Notes: generated from the letters alone by a model not told the origin. A stretch of 64,000 nucleotides of DNA from Rhodosorus marinus CCMP1338 (GCA_029953675.1 JAMWBK010000004.1:2976001-3040000), one strand, 5' to 3'. Shown: positions 28,622 to 64,000, numbered from the stretch's first letter. A program made the numbers and translations.

Positions 28622-29073
28622 CTACTCCTCTGCCACTGGCTCAGCCTTCTCGGTCACGACGTAATAAGGAGGAAGCCTACATGGACATCATCGATTGTCA
28701 ATATTCAGTGCCATGCCTATGACAATCACAACGAAAAATTGGGAAAACGAAAACAAACTTACGAAGGGTCGGCAAGGGGATTAACAGCGTATTCGGGCTT
28801 CTTCCTATTGATATCGTAGTTCGAGCGCTTCTTCGGGCGATACCTATCGTGCTTTTTCGCTCCTTTCTTCTGAACGTGATGAGCCATCTGAATAACTCCC
28901 TAACTCGCAGGAAAAAAGAGAGCACAAAACCACGCAAAACGCGTTTAAAAATCACTACCAAAATCTCTCCGCCATCATCGGGAACACAAATCTCGATCAA
29001 ACCCCACCTTTCTATTGCATACAGTCGCATTCCCTGAAGAGAACCGAATCCCGGTAGACGACACGAAAGCCAT
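28622..29073 (-). CDS. PSRP6: Plastid-targeted protein resembling plastid-specific 50S ribosomal protein 6 (PSRP6/cL38), 3 exons, 85 aa
   Basis: Exons 29008-29073, 28763-28899 and 28622-28676 with canonical GT-AG introns. Product has an MAFV transit peptide and QKKGAKKHDRYRPKKRSNYDINRKKPEY. Confidence 0.7.
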
Positions 29074-30598
29074 TATTCCTTTTTCTCAACAATACAAGTT
29101 GCAACTCTAGCTCAATCTTCCCAACAAAAATTCTGCCACATCCAAGCAATCCCTTCACCAAACCCGAAACCCTGGCCATCCTCAACACAAGCCAAAAAAA
29201 AAAAAACCACCAAAATGCCCCTGAACCGTCGCGATGAAATTTTTTCTTTACCATCTACCCCTGTTGCGAATTCTTAAAGATTCTTATCCTCCGTTTTATC
29301 GTACCCCTAGACCTACAATGCTATTTCATTTTATCATAATTTAAAATTAAAAGAGGGTGTTTACTTGAGAAGTCAGATTCCATCTCTTCTGATCTAGCTC
29401 AATTAATAGAATCTGGAAAGGGGTATAACGAATTTTGTTCGTCGCCGATGACTCGAAAATGACGTTAAATTAAGGCTTGCTCGAGATTTTGGTTTTTGGA
29501 AAATTTAGGGGAGTCAATCTCACGAGCCGGGAATATTGAATTTTGGAGTTTTTTGCTTTCCTTTTTTAGTACGTGTTGTTTGTTGGAAAAGTTTCCGTTT
29601 GAGATTGGTTTTGTGTGGGAGTGTGGGCTGGTGTAGTCGTTGAGCTCTCTCAACGAGAGATTCCATCATAGCGATGGAGCATTTCCGCTTTTCTGCTTTT
29701 TTTTTTGTTTCTTGCCTGGATACAGATCAAGAAGGGCGAGAGTCAGGTTTTCACTTGATATCCGGAAGGCGCTTGCGGGTTTGGATCGCAGATCGCCACC
29801 CCGGAGTGTAGCCTTGAGAGAGAAATTTCGCATGCAATGACAGAATTGATCATGTCCCGTTCTACTATGCTGAGGTTCCGCTTCTGCACAGGTGTTTCAT
29901 TTTGTGCCTGTGAAACTGTGGGAAGAGTCGGATGCGCGGGTATCACAATGAGAAGCTCCCCGTGCAAAAGGAAGTGGGCCCTGGTCGATTTTTCGAGCCT
30001 GGCAATCTGTGGGATCCGTTTCGCTTTTGAGATAGGCTTGCTTTACATCCGAATGCGTACTAGAGCTCTTAGCTCTTGGTCACCTTCACGGTTACCACAG
30101 GTTGCATGATAGTCAAAAGCACCGGCAGTGGCGGAACACCCGACCTTATAATAGTTCGTCGACGAAAGGGAGCAGCGGATCAGGGCTGGCCTCTCAATCA
30201 TGAATTGGAATTGCACGTTAGTACCCGGTTTCCGAGCTCTTGAGTTGTTTTGCTTCTGCAGACATAATGCGAATATCCAAAAATGCGTTGGAGGCATCTT
30301 CCTGCAAGATTGCTTCCGATATTGTTGCTCGTTCACGAAAAGATAGGACTGATGACTTTCTCTGTCGGATTACTCCCACAAACGTCTTTGCGCACCACCA
30401 GCTATCTATTGTTCCCAGCACCTCAGCGCACGGTCTACGATTGAGCCTTGCGATTGCCGGCGCTACCAGTATGCTTGGCAAGCTGAGACCTGGCGAAGAG
30501 CGTCTATCGACTAATACTTAGTCCCTCATAGTAGATCGACTGAGAAGCAAGGGAGTATGCCGCTGGGGTGTTAAAGTTCATTCCTGGTAGCGCTAAAT

Positions 30599-32334: not shown

Positions 32335-33741
32335 AGAAGACCGATCCACTAAAGATAAAATCTGCCGCAAACTTTTTGCTCCTCTTCGTGAAGATCGCTC
32401 AGGGCCTAACAGCTGGTACTGGACAATAGAACGTGCTTTCAATCCCCCAAAGGAGAAGACCGCGATGTCCTAAAACAATTTCGTCGGTCCGCATGAGTCT
32501 CCAGGTTCATATCCGAAAACTCAAACATCTCTGTTTCAAGCCCAGATCAACAAAACGTTTAGAATAAGCGCAAAAAATCATAATTTATCTCCACATCAAA
32601 ACACTACACCGTTCTCCATTGGTCAACTCTTAGTGGCGGTTACTCTTCTTCTAATAAAAACTTAGCACGTGTTGTACCATCCAATGAATAAATTGGAAAT
32701 ATATGATAATCTAACAAAATAGTTTATCTCAAACTGAACCCGTTTGTTCACCAACGAAAATCAAAGAAAGCCGGGTCCTTGTGATTTCGTCTTGTTTTAT
32801 ATTTCTATAATATTTCGAAAGTATTTGGAAAATGAGATTTCGTCCTCACCAGCGGTGAGAAGTATTCACTATTCATGCTAAGGTATTTGTTTTGCGTGCT
32901 CTCCTCGCGCAACGTTTCATTTGTTTCAGGGTTATCCTGGAGTGGAAACTGACTGGATCTGTGCTGATGGTAGATGATTATCTTTTCTTCCTTTTCGTTT
33001 GGTTGGGTTGCTGCAGTTGGCTGCCGAGCTTCAAGAGCGAGCTTGAGCATTTTAACAACTCTATCTTACTTGTGAGCGTAGCTGGGGAAAATAAAGCACA
33101 GAGTTCAGGAGCACAGAGCGTGTTCTCGCCAGGAAGAGGCTAGGGCATCATCTCGAGCTTGAAGAAACTAGAGATGATCAGAAAAAGCAATGGCAGAGGA
33201 ATAGTAATGTACGAATTATACTTGACGTATTGTCGTCGGCCTCTCTAGAGCACAAACAAAGTAGTTCATCATCCTCTCTCCCCCCTTTCACAGTGCGCTA
33301 AGCACGATCACCAGTCTGATCCTGTTCACGCAGGAGGTATACGATTCCCCTGCAGCATTGGCCTTCGTGTACTCGCTTGCTTGGTCACTAAACAAATCAA
33401 CAAAGCAATTCGATAAAATAAAAGAAATCCCTTCCCCCCCCCCCCCAACAAAAGTCAAGTAAATTAGTGCAAAAACAAAGTTATGAAACTGTGAATAACC
33501 CCAGTATTCTTCCAGATCTGAAGATATCACCATTTTTTATATTTATTTAGATCCTTATTCTTCCAAAATGATTCTTCGAAACATCGACGAGGAATTCTGA
33601 GCAGGAACCAAAGACAATTTAGAGAACAAGGGAAGTTCAATTTCTTAGATTTAGCACTCCAAAAAAAAGCACAATCGTGTGTGGAATTTCATTTAGGAGA
33701 AAGATGTCTTTTTTGGCGTTCGGAGGGGTTGACTTTTTGGT

Positions 33742-33769
33742 GGGGGGGGAGGGGGGGAGAGGGGCAGGG
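33742..33769 (+). promoter_or_regulatory. G-quadruplex-forming motif G8-A-G7-AGA-G4-CA-G3 in the TPS 5' region
   Basis: Four G-runs with 1-3 nt loops, about 70 nt upstream of the ATG. Function is inferred. Confidence 0.4.
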
Positions 33770-33836
33770 AGATTTGGACTGAGGAATCTTAGGCGGAGAT
33801 GAAAATTTCGCACGCATAGCAATAAAGGAATTCTGT

Positions 33837-38715: not shown

Positions 38716-39785
38716 TCTTCTCGCACCCACCTCCCCAAGCCTCCGGTTGTGGAACAGATTTACTATGCACCCACCCACTTGACCCACAAAGCTCGGGTGT
38801 TCACAGTCAAAAACTCGATTTCTGTCATTCTCAGCCGATTGTTCTTTCTAGTCTCAACAGTCCTCAGTCCTTCTTTCTCCAGTCATGCCTATCTCATATC
38901 TGCAATCACAAAGTCATTCTCATCCACAAGAAGCCGTTCCAATAGCCGTATTTCTTGTTTGAGGGTATCATCAAAATGAGCACATTGCGACTGAACAGCA
39001 TCCGTTCCTTAGTGAGCGACGATTGTGTCTTTGGTAAAAGCAGAATGGACGAGAAGTTGCCTTTTCTTTGTCCTGGAAGCTGTGTGCTGTTGGGTATGCT
39101 CGGTGATTTCTGTGTACTCTAGGTAGGGTTTGTAATCTGAAGAGCTAGCTGCCGATTGTGCTGTTGCACACAATGACCATAAAAGCACGTTGAGGTTGGC
39201 TTGTTGACACGACTTGACGCTGCTATCGGCTCGGAAGATGTAGGTAGATTGGTGTTTACGAGACCTGAGAGAAGGGCATCGCTGTGGGTTTTTGGAGAGC
39301 GCGTGTAGCGTCATTGTCGTCTAGTGCGTTCGTGGATACCATCTGTGGTTGAGCGTTGAAGGCCACATCGTTGGCTGTTGTAGGATTGTAGGGAAGACGG
39401 CACACGAGGAGATTCGCGATGGATACCCTGGTGAAAGCAAAATGTCCATGCGGGTTATGCATACTAATCGGCTGCGAGTGATGTCTAGGAGCTCTAGGAG
39501 CGTGCGAGATGCGGATACGCTTCTGTACAAGAGTCGTGGCGGTTTTCGCGTGGTATCTCTGTCCCGATCCGAGGTTGAGAGTCCCTTTCATTTGTTTACG
39601 TTTTCGTTCGGTTAGTGCAGTTTCAATCCTACGCAAAACAAGGAGATCGCGCTGATTGAATAACAACTTTTTCTTCTGAGTTTAACACAATGAGGCCACT
39701 TTCACAAGTCCCTATACAGCAACACAAGTCTTGTGAAGGGCATATGAGTCATTCCATGAGAACCATTTTTGTCACAGGCTGATTT

Positions 39786-40430
39786 CTACTCGGCGACTTT
39801 TCTTCTCCTTGTGGTAGTTACACTCTGCTTCTGAATTTCACCCGTCATTGCATCCATAGCCACATCTTTCTTCACCGGTTCAGTTTTTCCCGTTTCCGAT
39901 AGCACCTGCTTCTTCCTTCTGTCCGGCGGCAGCATCATGATGAAGATCGTTGTGAGGATAGCTGACAAACAGATGACCGTCTGTTCACAGGGAAGAGATC
40001 ACTCTTTGCTAAGTTCAAACTGCACCGACGAAGAAGGTAGCTTGGAATTCCCTCTTCCGTGGCGTGGCTTACCGGAACTGGTTTGGCGACTGAGAAATCG
40101 ATGAGCTTATCCACGTACGGTCCCAATCCAGCCTTTTCTATCCATCTCTGTACAACCTCCAAGACTTGCCGAGCAAACGAAATTATCGCAACGAACCTCT
40201 GGTGAGCAGTGCTTCGTCTTGTCAGCTGCTTCTGCAGTCTCTCGCTTATTCCAGCCGCATCCCCGCCATCCTTTCCAGAAACCCAAACGCCAACAAAAAC
40301 AAAGCAATCAGCAAAGCTCAACGGAATCTACTTCACCTAATATTCTGATCCATCCACTTACCTCCTGGCTAAATACCACCGATACAACCAACACAAACAC
40401 GCACACAACGGGTACCACCAACCTACCCAT
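39786..40430 (-). CDS. Hypothetical type I membrane protein (signal peptide, one TM, basic tail), 3 exons
   Basis: MGRLVVPVVCVFVLVVSVVFSQE, two GTAAG introns, TM segment TVICLSAILTTIFIMML, tail ending RRRKVAE*. Confidence 0.55.
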
Positions 40431-41214
40431 CGCTCAACTTCAAAACAAATACTAAAAGATTGTTCTCAAGCCAAAACAAAAACGGAATCAATCCACTGAA
40501 TCTATTCAAAAGCTACTCTCCAAGTCTTCCTATGAGACATTCAAACACCAACCCCCCTCTTGCTCACATCAAAAACGTTCTTAAGACACATACGTCGCGC
40601 TAACCTCCTTCGGCCATCTACCCACCCCAAAGCCTTCAACTGTACTTTCACCCCCGACTGCCGAAACCTTTCTTCATAACCACAAAAATTTACAATATCT
40701 ATACCCCCCCTATTCCACTATCCTTTTCTGTTTTTCAGTAATCCAACCCAGGGGGGATCATTGATTTAAGTTTGATTTTATTTTCTTTTGTATTCTATAC
40801 ATTCATTTGTTTATTCGGATTTGCAAAGGGTGTGCGAGTTTTCTAGGCTCAATTTGTGAAGGAGTTCTAGGGGTGAGGTCTTACTGTTCTTTTTGGTGGG
40901 GGTAAAAAGAAGGCGGATTTTTGAAGGGGATGATGGGCTGGGCAGGGATGGATGGGGTTGGACAGGGTGAGCAAGGTTTGACAGGTGGTGTTGATGAGTG
41001 GAGAGGTTGGGTAGCTTGGCTTGATAAAGTCAGTCTGTAGAGAGCTAGGAAGAGTGGCTGCTGGGTTGGTCTCAGGTGGGAATGGTGATCGTTTAGAGTG
41101 CTGCTTTCCATTGGAATGCGAAAGGGTTTTATGGATGGTCCATCTCTGAAGAGAGCTTTAGTATGAATTTAAAAAAGATCCTGAACATGCTGATATCACG
41201 GGCTGCGCGTCGCG

Positions 41215-42813: not shown

Positions 42814-43367
42814 TCACGCGAATCGATACTGCTCAACATCGAACTTGCTCCGCTTGTACTCTGCCAGTTTGCTCTCAAGGTTTCTAACGGAGGACGTGGC
42901 AAAATTCTCAAGAGTTCCTGGTGCATTGCCTTGTAGGGTGTAAAAGTGGAACGCCGGTATTGACTCAACTCCAAGGTTCTTTGCCAGGGGCTTGTTTTCA
43001 TGTATGTTCATCTCATAAAATTCCTTGTCCGGGTGCTGCTCAGCTAGAGCCTAGCCAAAATCAAAGACACGAACAAACACCCACAGGTTAGATGCTTCCC
43101 CGAGTTACCTCAGAATTCACCAAGTCAGGCTGATCGTTGCTAAGCCCTTACCTGAAGGTGGTGGGTCATGCTATCGCAAGCCTTGCAGTTAGGCGCCACG
43201 AACATCATCACCGAGAAATTATCTTTTCTCGTCACCTTCAAGTAATCCTCCACACTCTTCACTTTCTTTAAATCTCTTTCCTTTGCATTCATCACAACTC
43301 TCGGCCGTTTACTCGCAATCTCACCCTTCACAAAGCCAGCACCACTCACAAACCCAACTCCATCCAT
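42814..43367 (-). CDS. Plastid-targeted atypical thioredoxin-like protein (CKAC active site), 2 exons
   Basis: Transit-like MDGVGFVSGAGFV; MMFVAPNCKAC; FYEMNI...LAKNLGVESIPAFHFY (cis-Pro loop of the Trx fold). Confidence 0.8.
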
Positions 43368-44020
43368 ACTCAGACACACAAACACTGGTTTGTCCGCCCT
43401 CTAACAGAGGTCACAGAAACTCACAAAAACAAAAACCAAAGAAAAAAGAAAACCTGACCACAGTCAACAATCCCTTACTCACTCTCCTCACCAGTCTTCA
43501 GAGACCAAGCCTCCAGGCGCGATCTTCTTCAATGTCTTCTCTTACATACAGCATTCTCAGCTCATCTTCAATAGCACCTCCATCCACACCTTGTACACCC
43601 CCCGCGGCATTCCTATAGCTAAAAACAACTCAAATTCATTCCTCGGAACCCCAAAGATCCATCCTCGTAAGAATAACAAAAAATGCTTGTTCCCTTTTCT
43701 AAAAATAAAGAAAAAAAGTATTGACATAATACAAAATAATACCATTAAACAAATCATTCTATATCCATTCATTGGCTGTACGAGATTATATGTTTAGATT
43801 ATTGGTTAATATTTTATCCGATTTTCGTGGATAAACCAATGGAGTTCAAGAATTGGATTTTTCTCATTAGTCGTTGGATATTTATTCTTAAGAGGATTCC
43901 ATATTGATCTAAAATGTTGATTTAGAGCAATCCGATTTATCGCGCTTATCTTGAGGGAGGAGGGGGGGGGGGTAATTATTCATCTAACAAAAACTTTAAG
44001 AAGGATGGAAATTTTGGGGT

Positions 44021-44765
44021 TGGTGGGTTTCTGGATTGCTCTAGAGCGGAGGGTTTCTGAGTAGAAAATAGTGAATAAGGAGGAAATATTTTGGTGGGAT
44101 GCGTTAGATTTTGTTGTGGTTCGATTGGTGCTTTTTTGCTTGCTATTGAACTTAGCTGACAGTAACGGACTAGGAGTCTCAGAGTGGCAGGTATCTTTGG
44201 GTGGGAATTTATGGAGAAGCGTTGGGTCCGCTAGGGTTGTCGTCTTCATCAGGTGAATAGTAGCTGGGTGGGATTCTAGCGTTGAGATTTGCTCAGAGTT
44301 CGGAACTTTGTGTCCATCGCGCAATGGATCTTGAATGATTTGCCAAGTCGCATGTCCACGGGATTGTGTTTCGCTGACCCCTGGGTGAATTTTGCGGATG
44401 CGAGTGCTTCAAGTTCGGAATACGCATTTTTTGCGGGGAATATCAAAAGCCGGCTCTAGGCGCCGGCCGAACTACTATTCACCTGATGAAGATGACAACA
44501 TTAACCTACCAAGCGCTTCGAGGTAAGCGCGTACACAAAGGTATCTGCCCTGCCTTTTGACACACTCTAGTTCGTTTCGAGTAGTTGGCGACGGTGGTCC
44601 GTTGCTGTCAGCCGAGTAGTGCTTTTTTGCTTGCTCTTGTGAGCAAGCAAAAAAGCACTAATCGAACCACAACAAAATCTAGCGCAACCAACCAAAACAT
44701 TTCCTCCTTATTTACTATTTTCTAAGAGGAAACGCTCCGCTCAAGAGTAATCCAGAAACGCACGA
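44021..44765 (+). repeat. Long imperfect inverted repeat (arms ~44021-44263 and ~44472-44765, 208-nt spacer); candidate hairpin RNA
   Basis: Hand alignment: 44021-44144 vs 44642-44765 is gapless over 124 bp (109 WC, 5 G-U). 44151-44172 vs 44595-44616 gives 18 WC and 3 G-U. 44236-44263 vs 44472-44499 gives 27 WC and 1 G-U. Confidence 0.92.
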
Positions 44766-45907
44766 CTCTTATTCGTTCTGAAGACTTGCTTCAGAAATGT
44801 ATTTAATGCGTAATCTTTTTGCTGCTATTCCGGTACTCGAGCTCATGTTGCTGGCCTTCGCCTGGGCAACATTATGCACCTTGTGAGGGATCATGTCTTT
44901 GAGACCCTTGGAACCGGCTGAACGAAAAGGATGCTCCGAAGTGCACTGGGCTCCATTACCAGAGGATCCGGAGAATCCGGAGGATTCTGGGCGTACCTGC
45001 TTTGATGCTCACTATCATCTATGTGACGAACGACGGGTGTCGGTTGTAGACGCGAATGGAAAGTGTCGTTCTAACGGTTGCATCTCGATCCGCGGTTTCT
45101 TCCGCCGAGAGAGATAATTGTTCACTTCATTCCCTAGAAAACGAGCAAAGGCTCCTTCACAGTTCTGCGTGTGGATTCTCGTTCGCTCCGCATTGCTCCA
45201 ACCCCTAGCAGGCCCAGACCCTGAAAGCCTCCCGGACGACTGTGGAAACGCACTGTGGGGATATTTACCTTCGCCCGGAAATGAAAGACCTTCTTGGCTT
45301 GAATTCGCTGGTAGGATATCCCCGTTCTGTACGCACGAAGAGCGCCGTATGGCCAGCCTTCCGAGGAATGGCCATGTCCTCCAGGCCTCCTACGTAGGCA
45401 CTAGATTCCTACAATCCCCATCGGTTTCAGACCACGCGTAACCCGTCGAGGCGGTCGCGAGAGTCTACGAGTCCACGGATCAGTACACCCATGAGCTTTC
45501 CAAGCCAATAAGAGTACGCGAATGCCTCAAATTTTACTAAACGCAAATAACATCATATACCACAACATTTGAAAGGCCAAGTCAGAACTAAATAGCGCTA
45601 AGAAATCCCACACTAATAAAATCAAATTCCCGCCCGACTCGAGCGCGCACCCGAGGAAGAGGTACTAAAGGCGTCATCTATTTTCAAAGCTGACTTAGTA
45701 GTTCGTCAAAGCTCTTGCGGAAACGATAGTCGTGCCAAATTTGCCATCACCAGAGATCCCAGATATACTCACTGGGAGTACTCTTTAGGAACGAATGAGC
45801 TGCCAATACTTTTGCTCACTAGTAATAATCTCTCGCCTCGGGCCGACCAGTCGCTTGCTTAACGCTTCTTCCGAGAGAACAGGTAGTATTACAGAGGTGT
45901 CACTTCC

Positions 45908-48009
45908 TCAAGCCTGCAAAAAGTTGCATATTTGCCAATCAGTAAGGTGGAAATTCGGATAAAACAATTCTAGCGCATGAACTGAGAGACGCTCACGTGG
46001 TTAAGAACAGCTTGATGGTCCTTTGCAAAGAGCTGCTGCTGTGCCTTGGGTTTCTCTGTCTCAGGAGTAAGCGACTCGAGCTTACCCGATCTCACAACAA
46101 CGGACGAGGGAGACGAGGAATTGTTCCTCATGCTCACGCTTGAAGTCGGGGATGAACATTTCAGCTTCTGAATAGTTGCCTCGAGCTGTTCACCTTCTTC
46201 TTCGAGTTCCGAGATCTCATCTCGAAGAGCTTTGATAAGAACGCCCTTCTGGTTGCAGTCCGCCTCGAGAGAGCCGATAACCTTGTTCCGATCGCTAAGA
46301 GACTTTACCTCAGCAGAAAGGGTTGCGTTTAACTCCTTCAGCTTGGTATGATCGAGCTTCAAGCTCTTCAAATCATTAGCGGCTTTATCCGCAGCTGCAC
46401 TGGCCTCTTCGTATTTCTGGGCCACTGCGTCGAGATCCTTCTTGTTTCTCTGGTACCGGTGTTTGTAGTTTCTCTCGCTCAGCTTCAAGGTCTTGGACTG
46501 ACTGGTGGCTATCAACCGGTCCTCCTGTGCAATCTTCAATTCTAGCTTGAGCACCTCTATCTCAGCCTCGAGCTCTTCCTGCTTGAACTCGTTTTCCTTC
46601 ACAGCCGCAAAACGATAAAGCGCAAACGAGCGTTTAGCAACTAAAACAGAAGCCAGTCCGCACGTTGGGGACGATTTCTCGCAACTTGCGTTACCTCGTC
46701 AAGGAATACATCTAGTTGCCGTAGGTTCTTTCGCCCGTTCGAGAGCATGTCTATTCTCTGAAGCATGTGTCTGCGCTCTTCCTTAAAGATGACTTCTTCT
46801 TCTTCTGCCCTCTCGACAACTTCAGAGTACTTCATTTGCAATGCAGAATGTTCTTGCTGCAAACCTACGATTTGCTTGTCCAGGCCGCTCGACTTTACTA
46901 GGAGCGCATCCCTCTCCGAGATAACATCGGCCATCTCTATGTCTTTCATCTCGGTCCTTGTTGTGGTGCTCTCAAGTTCTCTCTGCGCGTTTGCTAGAGA
47001 AACCTTGACGGTACTGAGCTCGGCCAACGTCGCGATTTCCCTGTCCAGCAGCAGCTGCTTTTCGTTGGAATAAATATGATTCTCCGCTTGCATCATCTGC
47101 AACTCTGCTTTTGTCTTCCTCAGGTCTTCAACGATAGCTGCCTGTGCGCCCAATCCCTGAGACTTCTGTAGCTTGTTCAAGGACTGCTCCAGATTCCTCA
47201 GTCTCGCCTCCGTTTCGTTCATGGTGAAAATAAGCCTTGTATTCTCCTTAAGCGTTCTGTTCCTATCTGCTTCGACGGCCTTGAGCTTCGACTGCGTAGC
47301 TCTGAGCTCATCCGCCAGGTCCAGTACTTTCCTTTCCTTGTCCTCGTTTAACCCGTATTTGACATCTGTACTGTCCCTGTCAATAGAGTTTGTGCTCGGA
47401 TATCTGGTACGTACGGCGCCAGCAGATTGGCTTTGAACAATCCTAGACCCTCTGGAACCTTGTGACGTTCTCGGAGCTGATCACGGAAAACTCTTACAGT
47501 TAGCATCGACCACGGAGAACCACTCTCAAGACCTAAGGCAGCTGGCGGAGGGCTTGGTGCTTACCTGGCGGTGCGTCGTCGACGACCGTAGACGAGAAAT
47601 AGTTCTTTAAGACGTTGATTTCTTTCCCAAATTGTTCCACCCTACTCTCCAGCTCATGAACTCTAGCGTCCTCGCCAGGGTCATTCACTGAGTCACGACT
47701 GGCTAGGTGGATATCCCGCTCGGACTTGGAGAGCGGTGGCTTCGATAACTTGGAAACTGGAGGGCTTGTTGATGAAGCCCTCCTGTCGGGCTCCTCAGGC
47801 TTTGCATTCTGGTCGCGACGCCCAAACAAAAACCTAGTTGAATTGAACCTTCCCAATCCAAGCTGGCGTGAAACGAAACTTAAACATTCAGAACATGAAC
47901 CAATCCGAACAAATGACGAAATCCAAAACCGTTCTCTGAAGGTCGCCCTTACCTTGAAAGACTTTCTGCTCTCTCGATTACCCCTCGACGAGTCACTTGC
48001 AACATCCAT
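45908..48009 (-). CDS. Long coiled-coil protein, multi-exon, unknown function
   Basis: ORFs 47533-48039, 46641-47222 and 45970-46602 are E/K/L-rich heptad sequence linked by introns. Start MDVASDSS at 48009. Confidence 0.7.
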
Positions 48010-58963: not shown

Positions 58964-59426
58964 ATGAGATTTCCGGGGTTGAAAGCGGCTCGACAGAGAC
59001 GTGAAGCCAATCCGTTTTGTATGAAATGCGGTACAGTGATAAGTGGTGTTGATGAGAGATGTTCTGTATGTGGGAGTGAACTTGGGCAGCGGAGTGCGGC
59101 AATGGATACTACACGAGTGGAGCTCGAAGCTTCGGATACGATGAAGGAGCTCCTGCATGATGTGGATGATTCTGAAGGGGACAATCAAGCTGCCGTTATT
59201 CAAGAGGAATGCCCACAATGTAAAGCCGTTGGCTTATCGTTTAGAACCGCTCAGCTGCGTTCCGCGGATGAGGGTCAGACAATTTTTTATACTTGCCTCT
59301 CCTGCAAGTAAGTCGAACACAGTCTAGCAATACCCAAAACAGATTTGTGCTCTGCGATGAGAGCAAATTTGACTGTTATGTGCTGCTCTTGATGCCTCCA
59401 GGTATAAATTTACAGTTAACTCTTGA
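58964..59426 (+). CDS. RPA12: RNA polymerase I subunit RPA12 (A12.2), 2 exons
   Basis: N-terminal FCMKCG...CSVC zinc ribbon; C-terminal ECPQC...AQLRSADEGQTIFYTCLSC, intron, then KYKFTVNS*. Confidence 0.9.
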
Positions 59427-59559
59427 ACCTTCCAAAGGTACTTTGGTCAAGTGCTCAAGTCACGGGTGATTGGCGTACCAGACATTGGATTGGTTTTGTT
59501 CGCGGTTGCGCTGAAAAGTTGTTACTCAACCCCTCATGACCTTGTTGCACAATCAAGCT

Positions 59560-59911
59560 TCGTGGCCTCACTTTGTCGCTTTGGCTTGAACGAAATCGAA
59601 TTTTCCCTTGCGCAGGGGATCGTACCTGGAGATTCAACGGCACTGTGCACCTAGACAAGGCAAAGGTCAAACAGCAGACGTGAAGTGACGCGACGTGCTT
59701 GTTGGCAATGTTTCTTCCAGATGACTTCGCCCTTTTACATGATCTACTCGTGGCCTCGCTTTTTCACTTTGGCCTGAACGATATTGAATTTTCCCTTGAA
59801 GCAGAGGATCATAACTGGAGATTCAACGGCACTGTGCACCTAAAAAGGGTCAACCACCGTGCTTGTTGGCAATGTTTCTTCCAGAAGACTCCGCCCTTTT
59901 ACATGATCTAC
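59560..59911. repeat. Imperfect tandem duplication (188 bp + 164 bp)
   Basis: Units 59560-59747 and 59748-59911 share two exact 28-nt blocks (ctggagattcaacggcactgtgcaccta; cgtgcttgttggcaatgtttcttccaga) and an exact 19-nt end block. Confidence 0.95.
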
Positions 59912-59989
59912 TGGCCAAGCCACGCCAAGGCCAGCACACTACCCGAAAACTTTCAAGGGACAGAATATAACTTATTTGAAAAGAGCTAA

Positions 59990-62900: not shown

Positions 62901-63100
62901 TCATTTTGAAGCTGCTTTGTCCTTCCCTCCAGTTGGGCTGAGAACTGCTCAAATCTTCCCATACCTTTCAGAACCCCTTTCAAGGTCTCCTCTAGAGCTT
63001 CTCTCTCTTTTTGCTCAGCCTCTACTTGCTCTTCCAGGAGGTTGATCGCACCACGCAGAAGCACAGGATCTTCAACCTTCATTATGTCTTCCGATGCCAT
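59990..63100 (-). CDS. 1036-aa intronless coiled-coil protein with internal 43-aa repeats
   Basis: Single long ORF, E/K/A/L-rich, with periodic EIS.L+.EN motifs. Confidence 0.85.
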   Translation of the reverse strand: MASEDIMKVEDPVLLRGAINLLEEQVEAEQKEREALEETLKGVLKGMGRFEQFSAQLEGRTKQLQNELKHVTTERDNLLRRIQQKQSGLAHVASGSDAMREEVISLKKELADFTDLFEKVEKERNELKLKLQDRERVALVRDLAPHFEVPTAPGALSTNSLRSVQSDLEKLQDKARKLSDLKVTLEAENVKVKEENASIAKELTLLRTDREEMQHAIAENDNYKRESEAEQDLRRQETDALLVKTEELQCKLNRVEAEMLLVMEEKSKTGLQLSDVLVRNKELVSSAKDTEAEKIFMKKDIVRLEKELSATHNDRLNLEKTRSRLENALVEEQSKTKHVEEQMKRDHAELEENYRAVEAEKIHREEELAKHVIDIAILKEALDRSSREATEVSDQNEEAKKEISKLRTENSLLSEQAIEAVKQAKIQYEAELEKVATEGKATWAEISTLRAENAKVLKETAESIRIEKERHEEEIQKHVAQYFEAVEEISNLKTENTELLEQTADVVKVEKARHEEDLRRVVEQHDEDLRSVRDQHEEAQMKIVLLESEVKSVREQAAEASKLASISFEADRQQIVTEKEDAVKKVSNLQAVNARILEETGQAAAAEKSRYEEEISKLSSAISAAQEQADVNAKAREVEVSQLQVESSAALVQADIAARNEQRKLEAELQEAFTLCEKLKEESSTLRSENSEMKEQISELAISAAQKQKELSGTISEIAGLRSSSKASSKKAEELRRQREKTLSELASMKEENSLLRKQLTMEAANARVKADSLSEMEARMTNAVALREKTNFACAEAREAVLDVLEKEFHVPKGTELDARETGKTQVDRLERRRVAFSERLMGSLGGMEQNENDSGTANMNPRQKLRRSSPKAVREKNDSLMGLRVINEIRSVPVSAPHIAREFLKPNTYLKPSPLYCLLLRTQHDVEANQTGQAESNAEGLSVSVNLLLEYIREFRVHLDKSSPDNTVPLNTRVRSVCDTLRRQDIIIADLERAQRASSEFVGREVTKCEILESRLNHVQDHMWDYETAADWLL

Positions 63101-64000
63101 TGCACTTTTAACCTATCCGAATAACGCGAATTCACGAATCCTTCTCCAACATAGAGTCCAGATAAATCCTCGTCACTCCTCCATCAACGGCTGATTTTCT
63201 AGTATTATTTTCCTCAGGGTATCCGGTACCAGTCCATAAACCCTCTGTAGCCGTTAGTCCTGTTGGCACTTTTCCTAACATATACCGCACCTCAACCTTA
63301 TTCAGGCCTTGCTCCTCCTGCTCTTCCACCCCTCATCTCAAAATCTTCAGGACCAGTGAATCCTGAGCCAGACTGTTGCTATCAGGTTCCCGCCTCTCTT
63401 TCACCCCCGTTGAATCGATCCATTCGTTGTCAAAAAAAAGACTTATAAGGGGGAGAAGACGCATCGCTGTGAAGGTTTACAAACGCGGACAAAATATTCT
63501 TAAAACAATTATCGTCACACATATTCAAAATTGGTTCATCTCTTGCGAAGCTCGACTTAGCTTCCCCCCCCCCCCGCCACTCCTACGGGAGCAGATGTTA
63601 TCTCGGTGCGGTATGCAGTAAAACTTCAACCCCTCTCAGAGTTTTTCGAATTATTCAGATACGGAAAGATGGACTGCGCCTGAGCTGGGGGGTTGGGTGA
63701 GGTATCCGTTTCATTTTCTAGATTAAGTATTATCATCTAAATTAGGTACCATAGATATCATTTTAAAACAAATTTCATAATTTGCTTTCTAATATCTATA
63801 TCAGCATTTAGCCGATTTCGGGCTTTCTTGGCCTTTTAAGAACTCAGAGCTTCCCCGCTACCTTTTTTTTGGTAGATATCATCTATTTAATAAGATTTCA
63901 ACGGTTACCTTTCGATCCCATTTGGTTCATGGTTTTTTATTGTAAAAAAGGTTTGGAAACGTTAAAGTCCGTTACGGAGTCTATCAGTTCTATTGACTAG

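What the first reader, a model, noticed from the sequence alone, without database searches (positions are those of the whole stretch)
44021..44765. ~745-bp fold-back locus with a + strand G-U pairing bias: candidate long hairpin RNA (miRNA/siRNA precursor)
Seen in sequence: two ~240-290-nt arms flank a 208-nt spacer. The outer stem is 124 bp and gapless (109 WC, 5 G-U, 10 mismatches). A 22-bp middle stem follows. A 78-position gapless inner register (44186-44263 with 44472-44549) ends in a near-perfect 28-bp duplex (27 WC + 1 G-U), long enough for a 21-24-nt guide/star pair. Across the four well-aligned blocks, transition mismatches are 11 G-U against 2 A-C on the + strand (about 1:1 expected if neutral; two-sided binomial ~0.02 by hand). 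The locus has no credible ORF, no obvious TSD and no second copy in the window. It starts just after an AT/CCAAT-rich segment and a G-tract (~43955-43972), head-to-head with the thioredoxin gene, like other apparent promoters here. Established: long imperfect fold-backs are the form of algal/plant MIRNA precursors and Drosophila hpRNAs. Inference: a transcribed, Dicer-processed hairpin RNA in a probable red alga, a group where endogenous small-RNA genes are poorly defined. A GTAAGC...TAG segment (44523-44570, 48 nt) in the right arm could be an intron that remodels the stem.
Basis: partly seen in the sequence, partly recalled or inferred. Interest (0 to 1): 0.75.

Follow-up and report, generated by a model that had tools for sequence, protein, structure and literature searches.

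The report
Inverted duplication beside thioredoxin promoter
A real 745-base fold-back in a gene-free gap of the red alga Rhodosorus marinus copies, in reverse, the stretch flanking a thioredoxin promoter; it could be read into a long hairpin RNA, but nothing here shows that it is made or cut into small RNAs.

Summary
The fold-back is real. It is the only long inverted repeat in the 64-kb window. It has no second copy there, no target-site duplication, no coding signal and no Rfam or Pfam match.

The window is Rhodosorus marinus CCMP1338 nuclear contig JAMWBK010000004.1, bases 2,976,001-3,040,000. The locus lies in a 2.54-kb stretch with no called gene, between two minus-strand genes (thioredoxin and a coiled-coil protein).

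New here: the left arm lies where other promoters in the window carry a G+T-rich, leader-like flank on the strand opposite the gene. It follows an AT-rich trough, a CCAAT cluster and a G11 tract. The right arm is its inverted copy. A later, perfect 20-bp palindrome inside the right arm shows that DNA-level template switching recurs here.

The plus-strand G-U excess is confirmed (19:5). The local G+T pressure can largely explain it, so it is weak evidence for selection on RNA pairing. The proposed intron is not supported.

Transcription, small RNAs, genome-wide copy number and Dicer/Argonaute could not be tested. A plus-strand hairpin RNA that feeds siRNA production is the leading reading (about 0.4). 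A silent DNA quasi-palindrome is nearly as likely.

The parts
43590..43962 (.). AT-rich trough (GC 0.35 or less) with a cluster of four CCAAT boxes (starting at 43771, 43801, 43836 and 43852). Presumed core of the thioredoxin promoter, possibly bidirectional.
   Evidence: Comparable troughs lie 250-600 nt upstream of the ATG of most annotated genes in the window. Four of the six CCAAT clusters in the window lie in such troughs.
43953..43972 (+). G-tract GAGGGAGGAGGGGGGGGGGG (G11 at 43962-43972) at the far edge of the trough, on the strand pointing away from thioredoxin.
   Evidence: G-tracts sit the same way at trough edges for TPS (33742-33757, +) and for the 1036-aa gene (63564-63575, G on -). 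A C13 tract (33434) marks the opposite edge of the TPS trough.
44021..44144 (+). Left outer arm. G+T 0.72. Pairs with 44642-44765. Contains the leader-associated motif TTTTGGTGG at 44089-44097.
   Evidence: The motif occurs 5 times in the window against 0.73 expected.
44150..44172 (+). Left middle block. Pairs with 44595-44617 (19 WC, 3 G-U, 1 A-C).
44186..44263 (+). Left inner register. Positions 44186-44235 are only 62% paired. Positions 44236-44263 form the 28-bp near-perfect duplex with 44472-44499.
44264..44471 (.). Loop or spacer of 208 nt (172 nt if the weak 18-position extension is counted as stem). G+T 0.59 on +. Folds locally. Holds a 20-nt inverted match (44323-44342) to the thioredoxin promoter (43750-43769).
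44472..44549 (+). Right inner register, partner of 44186-44263.
44550..44594 (+). Extra segment specific to the right arm: 45 nt, against 13 nt at the matching place in the left arm. It makes an asymmetric internal loop.
44595..44617 (+). Right middle block, partner of 44150-44172.
44617..44660 (+). Secondary perfect palindrome: 20-bp stem 44617-44636 / 44641-44660 with loop TTGT. The inserted half carries variants specific to the right arm. It is therefore a later local template-switch duplication. It competes with the inner end of the long outer stem.
   Evidence: (I3, D1). The only Rfam sub-threshold matches are generic miRNA-hairpin hits to this hairpin, at 37 bits or less against gathering scores of 52-245 bits.
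44642..44765 (+). Right outer arm, the inverted copy of 44021-44144. G+T 0.31. Its copy of the TTTTGGTGG motif is mutated to TTTTGGTTGG.

Best explanation
The locus is a lineage-specific inverted duplication. It was made by DNA-level fold-back or template-switch events. What was duplicated is the G+T-rich, leader-like flank on the far side of the thioredoxin promoter in Rhodosorus marinus. The left arm is the native flank and the right arm is its inverted copy. If that flank is transcribed outward on the + strand, the RNA would run through both arms. It would fold into a branched, imperfect hairpin of about 270 bp with helices of 45, 28 and 26 bp. Such a hairpin is a natural Dicer substrate. 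The locus would then be a hairpin-siRNA source (hpRNA or proto-MIRNA type) rather than a mature miRNA gene.

Shown: the structure, its uniqueness in the window, its non-coding nature, its promoter-flank position and composition, and the nested secondary palindrome.
Inferred: + strand transcription, dicing and any regulatory target.
For: Structure.

Position: the locus lies in a 2.54-kb stretch with no called gene. Neighbouring intergenic gaps are 0.8-1.3 kb.

Non-coding: no homologue for the longest ORF; no Pfam hit in any of six frames; no codon-usage signal.

Promoter layout: in 10 of 10 annotated genes the 100 nt upstream of the ATG are G+T-rich on the sense strand (mean 0.64). An AT-rich trough follows. 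Beyond about -400 the opposite strand becomes G+T-rich. The left arm (G+T 0.72 and 0.64) occupies exactly that opposite-strand flank of the thioredoxin promoter, directly after a G11 tract. G-tracts sit the same way at the TPS promoter and at the promoter of the 1036-aa gene.

Motif: TTTTGGTGG occurs 5 times against 0.73 expected, always on the G+T-rich strand of leader-like segments. Two copies lie 100-140 nt upstream of real start codons. One lies in the left arm. The right-arm copy is mutated.

Strand bias: transition mismatches favour G-U on the + strand, 19:5. The spacer is also G+T-rich on + (0.59). Both fit + being the sense strand.

Mosaic divergence: outer stem 88.5% paired, 28-bp core 96%, the 50 nt between them 62% (Fisher P = 0.0002 and 0.0008, chosen after the fact). 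This fits retention of long helices, but patchy gene conversion would do the same.

RNAi plausibility: Argonaute is reported in Porphyridiophyceae, Bangiophyceae and Florideophyceae (PMC8304369).
Against: There is no expression or small-RNA evidence of any kind.

Dicer and Argonaute were not shown in R. marinus. The search was uninformative, and no paper links Rhodosorus with Argonaute.

The G-U bias is compatible with local G+T pressure alone (P = 0.10-0.23 for nulls of 0.65-0.70).

Nine of the 14 outer-stem differences break pairing, so there is no clear purifying selection on the stem.

The most recent mutation, the perfect 20-bp palindrome, competes with the main stem.

Both flanking genes are on the - strand. 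Read-through from the coiled-coil gene would therefore produce the - strand hairpin instead.

The G+T-rich opposite-strand flanks have no annotated transcripts. Their transcription is an inference from composition.

No complementary target was found in the 64-kb window.
Confidence: 0.4

Rival explanations
1. Silent DNA quasi-palindrome. An inverted duplication arose by replication template switching or fold-back repair in intergenic DNA. It is drifting neutrally and has no RNA product of consequence. The G-U bias and the mosaic divergence come from local compositional pressure, unequal constraint on the two arms, indels and patchy gene conversion between arms.
For: A second, perfect 20-bp palindrome nested in the right arm carries right-arm-specific variants. 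Template switching therefore recurs at this spot.

Transitions and transversions among mismatches are about equal (24 and 27). Most outer-stem differences break pairing.

The G-U excess is explained by nulls of 0.65-0.72.

The right arm carries the large extra segments (29 nt in place of 10 nt at the palindrome, and 45 nt against 13 nt further in) and has lost the leader motif. That is expected of an unconstrained copy.

There is no Rfam family and no homologue elsewhere.
Against: In a compact 31-Mb genome with intergenic gaps of about 1 kb, it would be unusual for a segment directly flanking a promoter to go untranscribed.

Long inverted repeats are unstable, yet this one has persisted to about 11% arm divergence while keeping helices of 45, 28 and 26 bp.

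Against a strand-symmetric null the G-U bias is significant (P = 0.007).
Confidence: 0.33
2. A non-autonomous fold-back or MITE-like transposable element, or a relic of one, inserted upstream of the thioredoxin gene.
For: The size (745 bp) and long terminal inverted repeats fit. There is no coding capacity. The published RepeatMasker table for this genome lists 4% unclassified repeats (6,757 elements), among which such a family could hide.
Against: There is no TSD of 4 bp or more for any choice of ends, and no matching 2-3 bp flanks at the repeat ends.

There is no second copy or fragment in 64 kb.

Classified DNA transposons make up only 0.03% of the genome, with no Harbinger or Tc1 elements.

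GC content equals the background.

The left arm has the composition and motif of native promoter flanks seen at promoters that lack any repeat.
Confidence: 0.12
3. A cis-acting element rather than a small-RNA source. One option is a hairpin in - strand read-through RNA from the upstream coiled-coil gene, or a cruciform-prone DNA segment, that acts as a terminator or insulator between the two tandem - strand genes. Another is a structured leader that modulates the promoter's output.
For: Both neighbours are on the - strand, and the locus lies between the 3' end of one and the promoter of the next. The - strand RNA also folds very stably, at -333 kcal/mol with z = -21.7.
Against: None of the other tandem gene pairs in the window has such a repeat, so it is not a general device. 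The mismatch bias favours the + strand. The locus lies 1.1 kb beyond the stop codon of the coiled-coil gene.
Confidence: 0.08
4. Assembly artefact (a nanopore fold-back chimera), or a nuclear insert of mitochondrial minicircle DNA (NUMT).
For: The assembly is built from long nanopore reads, and the source paper reports abundant NUMTs in this species (PMC10250338).
Against: The arms are 11% diverged, with indels and a 172-208-nt spacer. The locus lies inside a 3.19-Mb contig, about 170 kb from its end. Chimera palindromes are near-perfect. GC content and sequence style match local nuclear promoter flanks, whereas the paper describes the minicircles as GC-elevated. The minicircle sequences could not be fetched, so the NUMT idea was not tested directly.
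Confidence: 0.03

Closest known systems
Hairpin-RNA (hpRNA) / inverted-repeat siRNA loci: Drosophila hpRNAs, Arabidopsis IR71/IR2039, and the long-hairpin small-RNA precursors of Chlamydomonas
   Same: A single genomic inverted repeat with a stem of several hundred bp, an imperfect duplex and a loop of about 200 nt. It is non-coding and lies in intergenic DNA. It would yield many different siRNA duplexes rather than one.
   Different: No transcript and no small RNAs are shown. No target gene is known. The host lineage (Stylonematophyceae) has no described small-RNA pathway. The duplicated sequence looks like a promoter-flank leader, not a fragment of a protein-coding target.
Young plant MIRNA genes born by inverted duplication (the MIR161/MIR163 model; proto-MIRNAs)
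   Same: Origin by inverted duplication, followed by decay of most of the stem while some near-perfect segments remain. Here the remaining helices are 45, 28 and 26 bp long.
   Different: Plant proto-MIRNAs copy part of their future target gene. Here no source gene or target was found. At 745 nt the fold-back exceeds accepted MIRNA limits. Precise processing is unknown.
Quasi-palindrome template-switch mutations and spontaneous inverted duplications (DNA-level)
   Same: Nested inverted repeats. The inner, perfect 20-bp palindrome copies the adjacent right-arm sequence, including its private variants. That is the signature of intra-strand template switching.
   Different: Classical quasi-palindrome events span tens of bases. 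The main repeat here has arms of 240-290 nt with a spacer of about 200 nt, so it needs a larger inverted-duplication event.
MITEs / Foldback transposons
   Same: Small, non-coding, with long terminal inverted repeats.
   Different: No TSD, no other copy in 64 kb, not AT-rich, and the genome is almost free of classified DNA transposons.

Membership tests
MIRNA gene (plant/algal criteria, Axtell and Meyers type) | A single compact fold-back (about 300 nt or less in plants) that gives one dominant miRNA/miRNA* duplex | tested here: not met
   The fold-back is 745 nt with about 208 long-range pairs and three separate long helices of 45, 28 and 26 bp.
MIRNA gene (plant/algal criteria, Axtell and Meyers type) | A candidate duplex with at most 5 mismatched positions and at most 3 in asymmetric bulges | tested here: met
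   44236-44263 / 44472-44499 has 27 WC + 1 G-U and no bulge. This is a structural test only.
MIRNA gene (plant/algal criteria, Axtell and Meyers type) | Precise excision shown by small-RNA reads with 2-nt 3' overhangs, in replicate libraries | not testable with these tools
   No read data were accessible. No small-RNA data set for R. marinus was found.
hpRNA / inverted-repeat siRNA locus | A long intramolecular inverted repeat able to form at least about 100 bp of dsRNA | tested here: met
   The + strand folds at -402 kcal/mol with z = -27.6.
hpRNA / inverted-repeat siRNA locus | Both arms transcribed on one RNA molecule | not testable with these tools
   Only indirect support exists: promoter-flank position, G-tract, leader-like composition and motif. 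RNA-seq run SRR19576337 exists but could not be mapped here.
hpRNA / inverted-repeat siRNA locus | Dicer and Argonaute encoded by the host | tested here: inconclusive
   A search with Asparagopsis AGO3 returned Florideophyceae and plant Argonautes only. It returned no Rhodosorus protein, but also none from Porphyridium or Porphyra, which are reported to have Argonaute. The word prefilter therefore makes the result uninformative.
hpRNA / inverted-repeat siRNA locus | 20-25-nt siRNAs from the stem and a complementary target | tested here: inconclusive
   Small RNAs are not testable here. No complementary site beyond chance was found in the 64-kb window. The rest of the genome was not searchable.
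MITE / Foldback transposon | Target-site duplication flanking the terminal inverted repeats | tested here: not met
   One search found no TSD of 4 bp or more for any choice of ends. The flanks at the repeat ends are TTG and GAC.
MITE / Foldback transposon | Multiple dispersed copies in the genome | tested here: inconclusive
   There are none in the 64-kb window. The whole genome was not searchable. One metagenome match was a chance 21-mer.
NUMT (mitochondrial minicircle insert) | Sequence identity to a mitochondrial minicircle | not tested
   The minicircle records OK643888-OK643898 are not in any accessible collection. The composition argues against it.
Any Rfam RNA family | A score at or above the family's gathering threshold | tested here: not met
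   There are no matches at gathering thresholds in the whole window. The only matches are sub-threshold generic miRNA-hairpin hits to the 20-bp palindrome.

The most novel reading that the evidence does not exclude
A genuine Dicer-processed hairpin small-RNA gene in a stylonematophycean red alga. It would have been born not from a target gene but from inverted duplication of the outward leader of a bidirectional promoter. Its siRNAs would match the promoter-flank transcript itself. They could feed back on the thioredoxin promoter's divergent output, or on similar G+T-rich leaders elsewhere.
Probability: 0.1. Interest if true: 0.65.

Novelty: new member of a known kind. Interest (0 to 1): 0.35.

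Why it matters
Stringently supported small-RNA genes are lacking for red algae. Published red-algal miRNA lists rest on low-stringency criteria (PMC5381526, PMC12026948). Nothing is known for Stylonematophyceae.

This is a clean, single-locus candidate in a chromosome-level assembly, and matching RNA-seq already exists. That makes it a cheap test of whether this lineage has hairpin-derived siRNAs. It is also a test of how such loci arise.

Separately, the promoter layout seen here may help annotate transcription starts in this genome. The layout is a G+T-rich leader, an AT-rich trough, and a G+T-rich flank on the opposite strand with G-tracts at the trough edges.

If the locus proves silent, it is simply a well-preserved example of nested template-switch duplication.

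Tried and rejected
1. Homologues of the longest ORF over the left arm (114 aa): none.
2. Synteny through thioredoxin homologues: only transcriptome-derived proteins from other Rhodosorus strains (85-90% identity), so no DNA to compare.
3. Metagenome scan with the 21-mer core of the 28-bp duplex: one hit whose flanks do not match, so a chance hit.
4. Rfam at gathering thresholds and at permissive thresholds: nothing real.
5. tRNA scan: none.
6. Six-frame Pfam scan of 43368-45907 for transposase or pseudogene remnants: nothing.
7. The stop-poor + frame 44880-45441 as an unannotated gene: no codon-usage signal, and only one weak, repetitive hit among 1.84 billion representative proteins.
8. The proposed intron 44523-44570: deleting it does not improve the fold.
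9. Rebuilding spliced proteins of neighbouring genes to fetch more gene calls: too many equally valid splice models (182 for the coiled-coil gene), so abandoned. One single-exon guess was not on record.
10. Argonaute in R. marinus through Asparagopsis AGO3: uninformative.
11. Literature search for Rhodosorus together with Argonaute or Dicer: no paper.
12. Extended inverted homology between the thioredoxin promoter and the loop: only one 20-nt match.
13. Tandem repeats near the locus: only trivial ones.

Full report
**Where the window comes from.** The 1036-aa ORF of the window is encoded on NCBI assembly GCA_029953675.1, contig JAMWBK010000004.1 (3.19 Mb). [quoted passage not shown] Two fetched loci match the window exactly, which fixes window position = record position minus 2,976,000. 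The fold-back is therefore JAMWBK010000004.1:3,020,021-3,020,765, about 170 kb from the contig end.

**The observation.**
- The repeat finder reports arms 44023-44144 / 44642-44763 (122 nt, 89%) and 44186-44279 / 44456-44549 (94 nt, 71%).
- A gapped alignment of the left arm with the reverse complement of the right arm gives 263 aligned positions: 212 Watson-Crick, 19 G-U, 5 A-C and 27 transversion mismatches.
- The 28-bp duplex 44236-44263 / 44472-44499 has 27 WC + 1 G-U.
- The + strand RNA folds at -402 kcal/mol (z = -27.6) and the - strand at -333 (z = -21.7).
- The + strand MFE holds 208 long-range pairs. Its longest uninterrupted helices are 45 bp (44100-44144 / 44642-44686), 28 bp and 26 bp.
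- It is the only inverted repeat of at least 30 nt within 3 kb in the 64-kb window, and there is no other copy of any part of it there.
- An assembly artefact is unlikely. The arms differ by 11% and by indels, a spacer of 172-208 nt separates them, and the locus is internal to a 3.2-Mb contig.

**Gene context.** Gene calls on record for this contig place a 150-aa thioredoxin on the - strand at 42814-43367. I rebuilt its two exons, and the product equals P0001. A 580-aa coiled-coil protein lies on the - strand at 45908-48009. Nothing is called between 43368 and 45907. That is a 2.54-kb gap, where neighbouring intergenic gaps are 0.8-1.3 kb. Both neighbours are on the - strand, so the locus lies downstream of one gene and upstream of the next. 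The whole gap looks non-coding:
- The 114-aa ORF over the left arm has no homologue among 5.8 billion proteins.
- Six-frame translations have no Pfam match.
- Codon-usage scores of all ORFs in the gap (-0.14 to +0.12) are at or below the low end of real exons. Most exons score 0.09 to 0.40, and two score about zero.
- The stop-poor + frame 44880-45441 has only one weak, repetitive match among 1.84 billion representative proteins.
- Rfam and tRNA scans are empty. The only sub-threshold Rfam matches are generic miRNA-hairpin hits to a short local hairpin.

**Promoter layout and the nature of the left arm.** This is the main new result.
- For all 10 annotated genes whose starts I could place, the 100 nt upstream of the ATG are G+T-rich on the sense strand (0.54-0.75, mean 0.64).
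- Further upstream lies an AT-rich trough (GC 0.35 or less), 250-600 nt from the ATG.
- Beyond about -400 the skew reverses, so the opposite strand is G+T-rich (mean sense-strand G+T 0.40-0.45).
- Long G or C homopolymer tracts sit at the trough edges on the outward-pointing strand. Examples are G8+G7 at 33742 on the TPS side, C13 at 33434 on the other side of the same trough, and C12 at 63564 for the 1036-aa gene.
- The thioredoxin promoter follows this plan. Its - strand leader is G+T-rich (43265-43694). Its trough is 43590-43962, with four CCAAT boxes within 86 bp. A G11 tract follows at 43962-43972. A + strand G+T-rich segment then runs from 43994 to 44315. That last segment is the left arm (G+T 0.72 outer, 0.64 inner).
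- Comparable opposite-strand flanks with no inverted repeat exist at 40749-41118, 39012-39400 and 29464-29725.
- The motif TTTTGGTGG occurs 5 times in the window against 0.73 expected, and 0 of 100 shuffles reach 5. It is always on the G+T-rich strand of such segments. Two copies lie 100-140 nt upstream of real start codons, one lies in another opposite-strand flank, and one lies in the left arm at 44089. The right-arm copy is mutated.

I conclude that the left arm is native promoter-flank sequence of a type that looks like a transcribed leader, and that the right arm is its inverted copy. That the flank is transcribed is an inference from composition, not a demonstration.

**Origin.** Where the left arm has the 10-nt linker ATTGAACTTA, the right arm has 29 nt. 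Together with the adjacent arm sequence these form a perfect 20-bp palindrome (44617-44636 / 44641-44660, loop TTGT). The inserted half carries right-arm-specific variants (TAG and CTC where the left arm has TGG and CTA). It was therefore copied from the right arm itself after the arms had diverged. This is the signature of intra-strand template switching at a quasi-palindrome. It shows that DNA-level fold-back events recur here, and the large repeat most likely arose the same way. There is no TSD of 4 bp or more for any end choice. Classified DNA transposons make up only 0.03% of this genome (RepeatMasker table of PMC10250338). A transposon origin is therefore unlikely, although genome-wide copy number could not be checked.

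**The G-U bias.**
- I confirm it: 19 G-U against 5 A-C over the whole alignment (P = 0.0066 two-sided), and 10:2 in the well-aligned blocks (P = 0.039).
- It does not require selection on RNA pairing. Every Watson-Crick pair holds one keto base (G or T) and one amino base (A or C). An amino-to-keto transition on the + strand makes a G-U pair, and the reverse makes A-C.
- A local pressure toward G+T on the + strand, of the size seen at these flanks (0.60-0.72), predicts 58-70% G-U. Against nulls of 0.575, 0.65 and 0.70, the one-sided P for 19 or more of 24 is 0.023, 0.10 and 0.23.
- The same outcome follows if the left arm is constrained and only the right arm drifts.
- The spacer is also G+T-rich (0.59). 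Nine of the 14 differences in the outer stem abolish pairing.
- The bias is best read as a hint that the + strand is the sense strand across the locus, not as proof of a selected hairpin.

**Mosaic divergence.** Pairing is 88.5% in the outer 122 positions, 96% in the 28-bp core, 62% in the 50 positions between the middle block and the core, and 56% in the last 18. The differences are significant (Fisher P = 0.0002 and 0.0008), but the blocks were chosen after seeing the data. Selection for long helices, patchy gene conversion between arms, or local replacement by indels would each produce this pattern.

**The intron idea.** Deleting 44523-44570 lowers stability from -401.8 to -372.9 kcal/mol. 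That is no better than deleting other 48-nt windows of the right arm, the best of which gives -385.4. The two confidently placed introns nearby are 85 and 100 nt long. I found no support for a 48-nt intron.

**RNAi capacity.**
- No paper in the library mentions Rhodosorus together with Argonaute or Dicer.
- Argonaute is reported in Porphyridiophyceae, Bangiophyceae and Florideophyceae and is absent from Cyanidiales (PMC8304369). Chondrus and Asparagopsis encode Dicer-like and Argonaute proteins (PMC12026948).
- A search with Asparagopsis AGO3 found Florideophyceae and plant Argonautes but nothing from Rhodosorus, and also nothing from Porphyridium or Porphyra. The result is therefore uninformative.
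- Stringent surveys do not yet accept any red-algal miRNA (PMC5381526).

**Verdict.**
- The fold-back is real, unique in the window and non-coding. Its origin by inverted duplication of a promoter flank is well supported (about 0.9).
- Whether it is transcribed on the + strand and diced is not shown. I put the chance that it is a hairpin small-RNA source at about 0.4.
- The rival readings are a silent DNA quasi-palindrome (0.33), a transposon relic (0.12), another cis-acting role (0.08), and an artefact or NUMT (0.03).
- If it is active, it belongs with hpRNA / inverted-repeat siRNA loci rather than MIRNA genes, because it fails the size and single-duplex criteria.
- The decisive data are cheap to obtain. 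RNA-seq already exists for this strain (SRR19576337). A small-RNA library, a BLASTN of the arms against the assembly, and a domain search of the proteome for Piwi/PAZ and RNase III would complete the test.

Noticed in passing
window-wide; examples 29058-29725, 33369-33824, 40235-41118, 43265-44315, 63100-63917: A recurrent promoter layout. The 100-300 nt upstream of each ATG are G+T-rich on the sense strand (10 of 10 genes). An AT-rich trough lies 250-600 nt upstream. A G+T-rich flank lies on the opposite strand beyond it. G or C homopolymer tracts of 10-13 nt sit at trough edges on the outward strand. The motif TTTTGGTGG is enriched (5 against 0.73 expected) on the G+T-rich strand.
   Followed up: partly
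window 59560-59912: A unit of about 188 bp is duplicated in tandem (three co-linear repeat families, 82-96% identity). It lies across the 3' end of the TFIIS-zinc-ribbon gene (58964-59654, +) and just before the stop codon of the 1036-aa coiled-coil gene (59990, - strand).
   Followed up: no
window 43750-43769 and 44323-44342: A 20-nt inverted match (18 of 20; 0 of 500 shuffles score as high) between the CCAAT-box region of the thioredoxin promoter and the loop of the fold-back. The shared core is CAAATCATTC-N3-ATCCATT. It may be a shared protein-binding site or a trace of an older rearrangement.
   Followed up: partly
window 44880-45441, + strand: A frame of 183 codons with a single stop, downstream of the fold-back. 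It has no codon-usage signal, no Pfam match and only one weak, repetitive database hit. It is probably non-coding, but it could be the body of a non-coding transcript or a decayed gene.
   Followed up: yes
thioredoxin gene, window 42814-43367 (-): Transcriptome proteins labelled Rhodosorus marinus from other strains (MMETSP) are only 85-90% identical to the CCMP1338 thioredoxin. Strains under this species name are therefore deeply diverged.
   Followed up: no
window 3804, 5936, 33434, 43962, 48578, 49998, 63564: Seven G or C homopolymer runs of 10-13 nt in 64 kb. In a nanopore-based assembly their exact lengths may be unreliable.
   Followed up: no
L003 6984-7004 (metagenome contig Ga0265295_1007134): An exact 21-nt match to the core of the 28-bp duplex, with unrelated flanks. 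It is a chance match, not a relative.
   Followed up: yes
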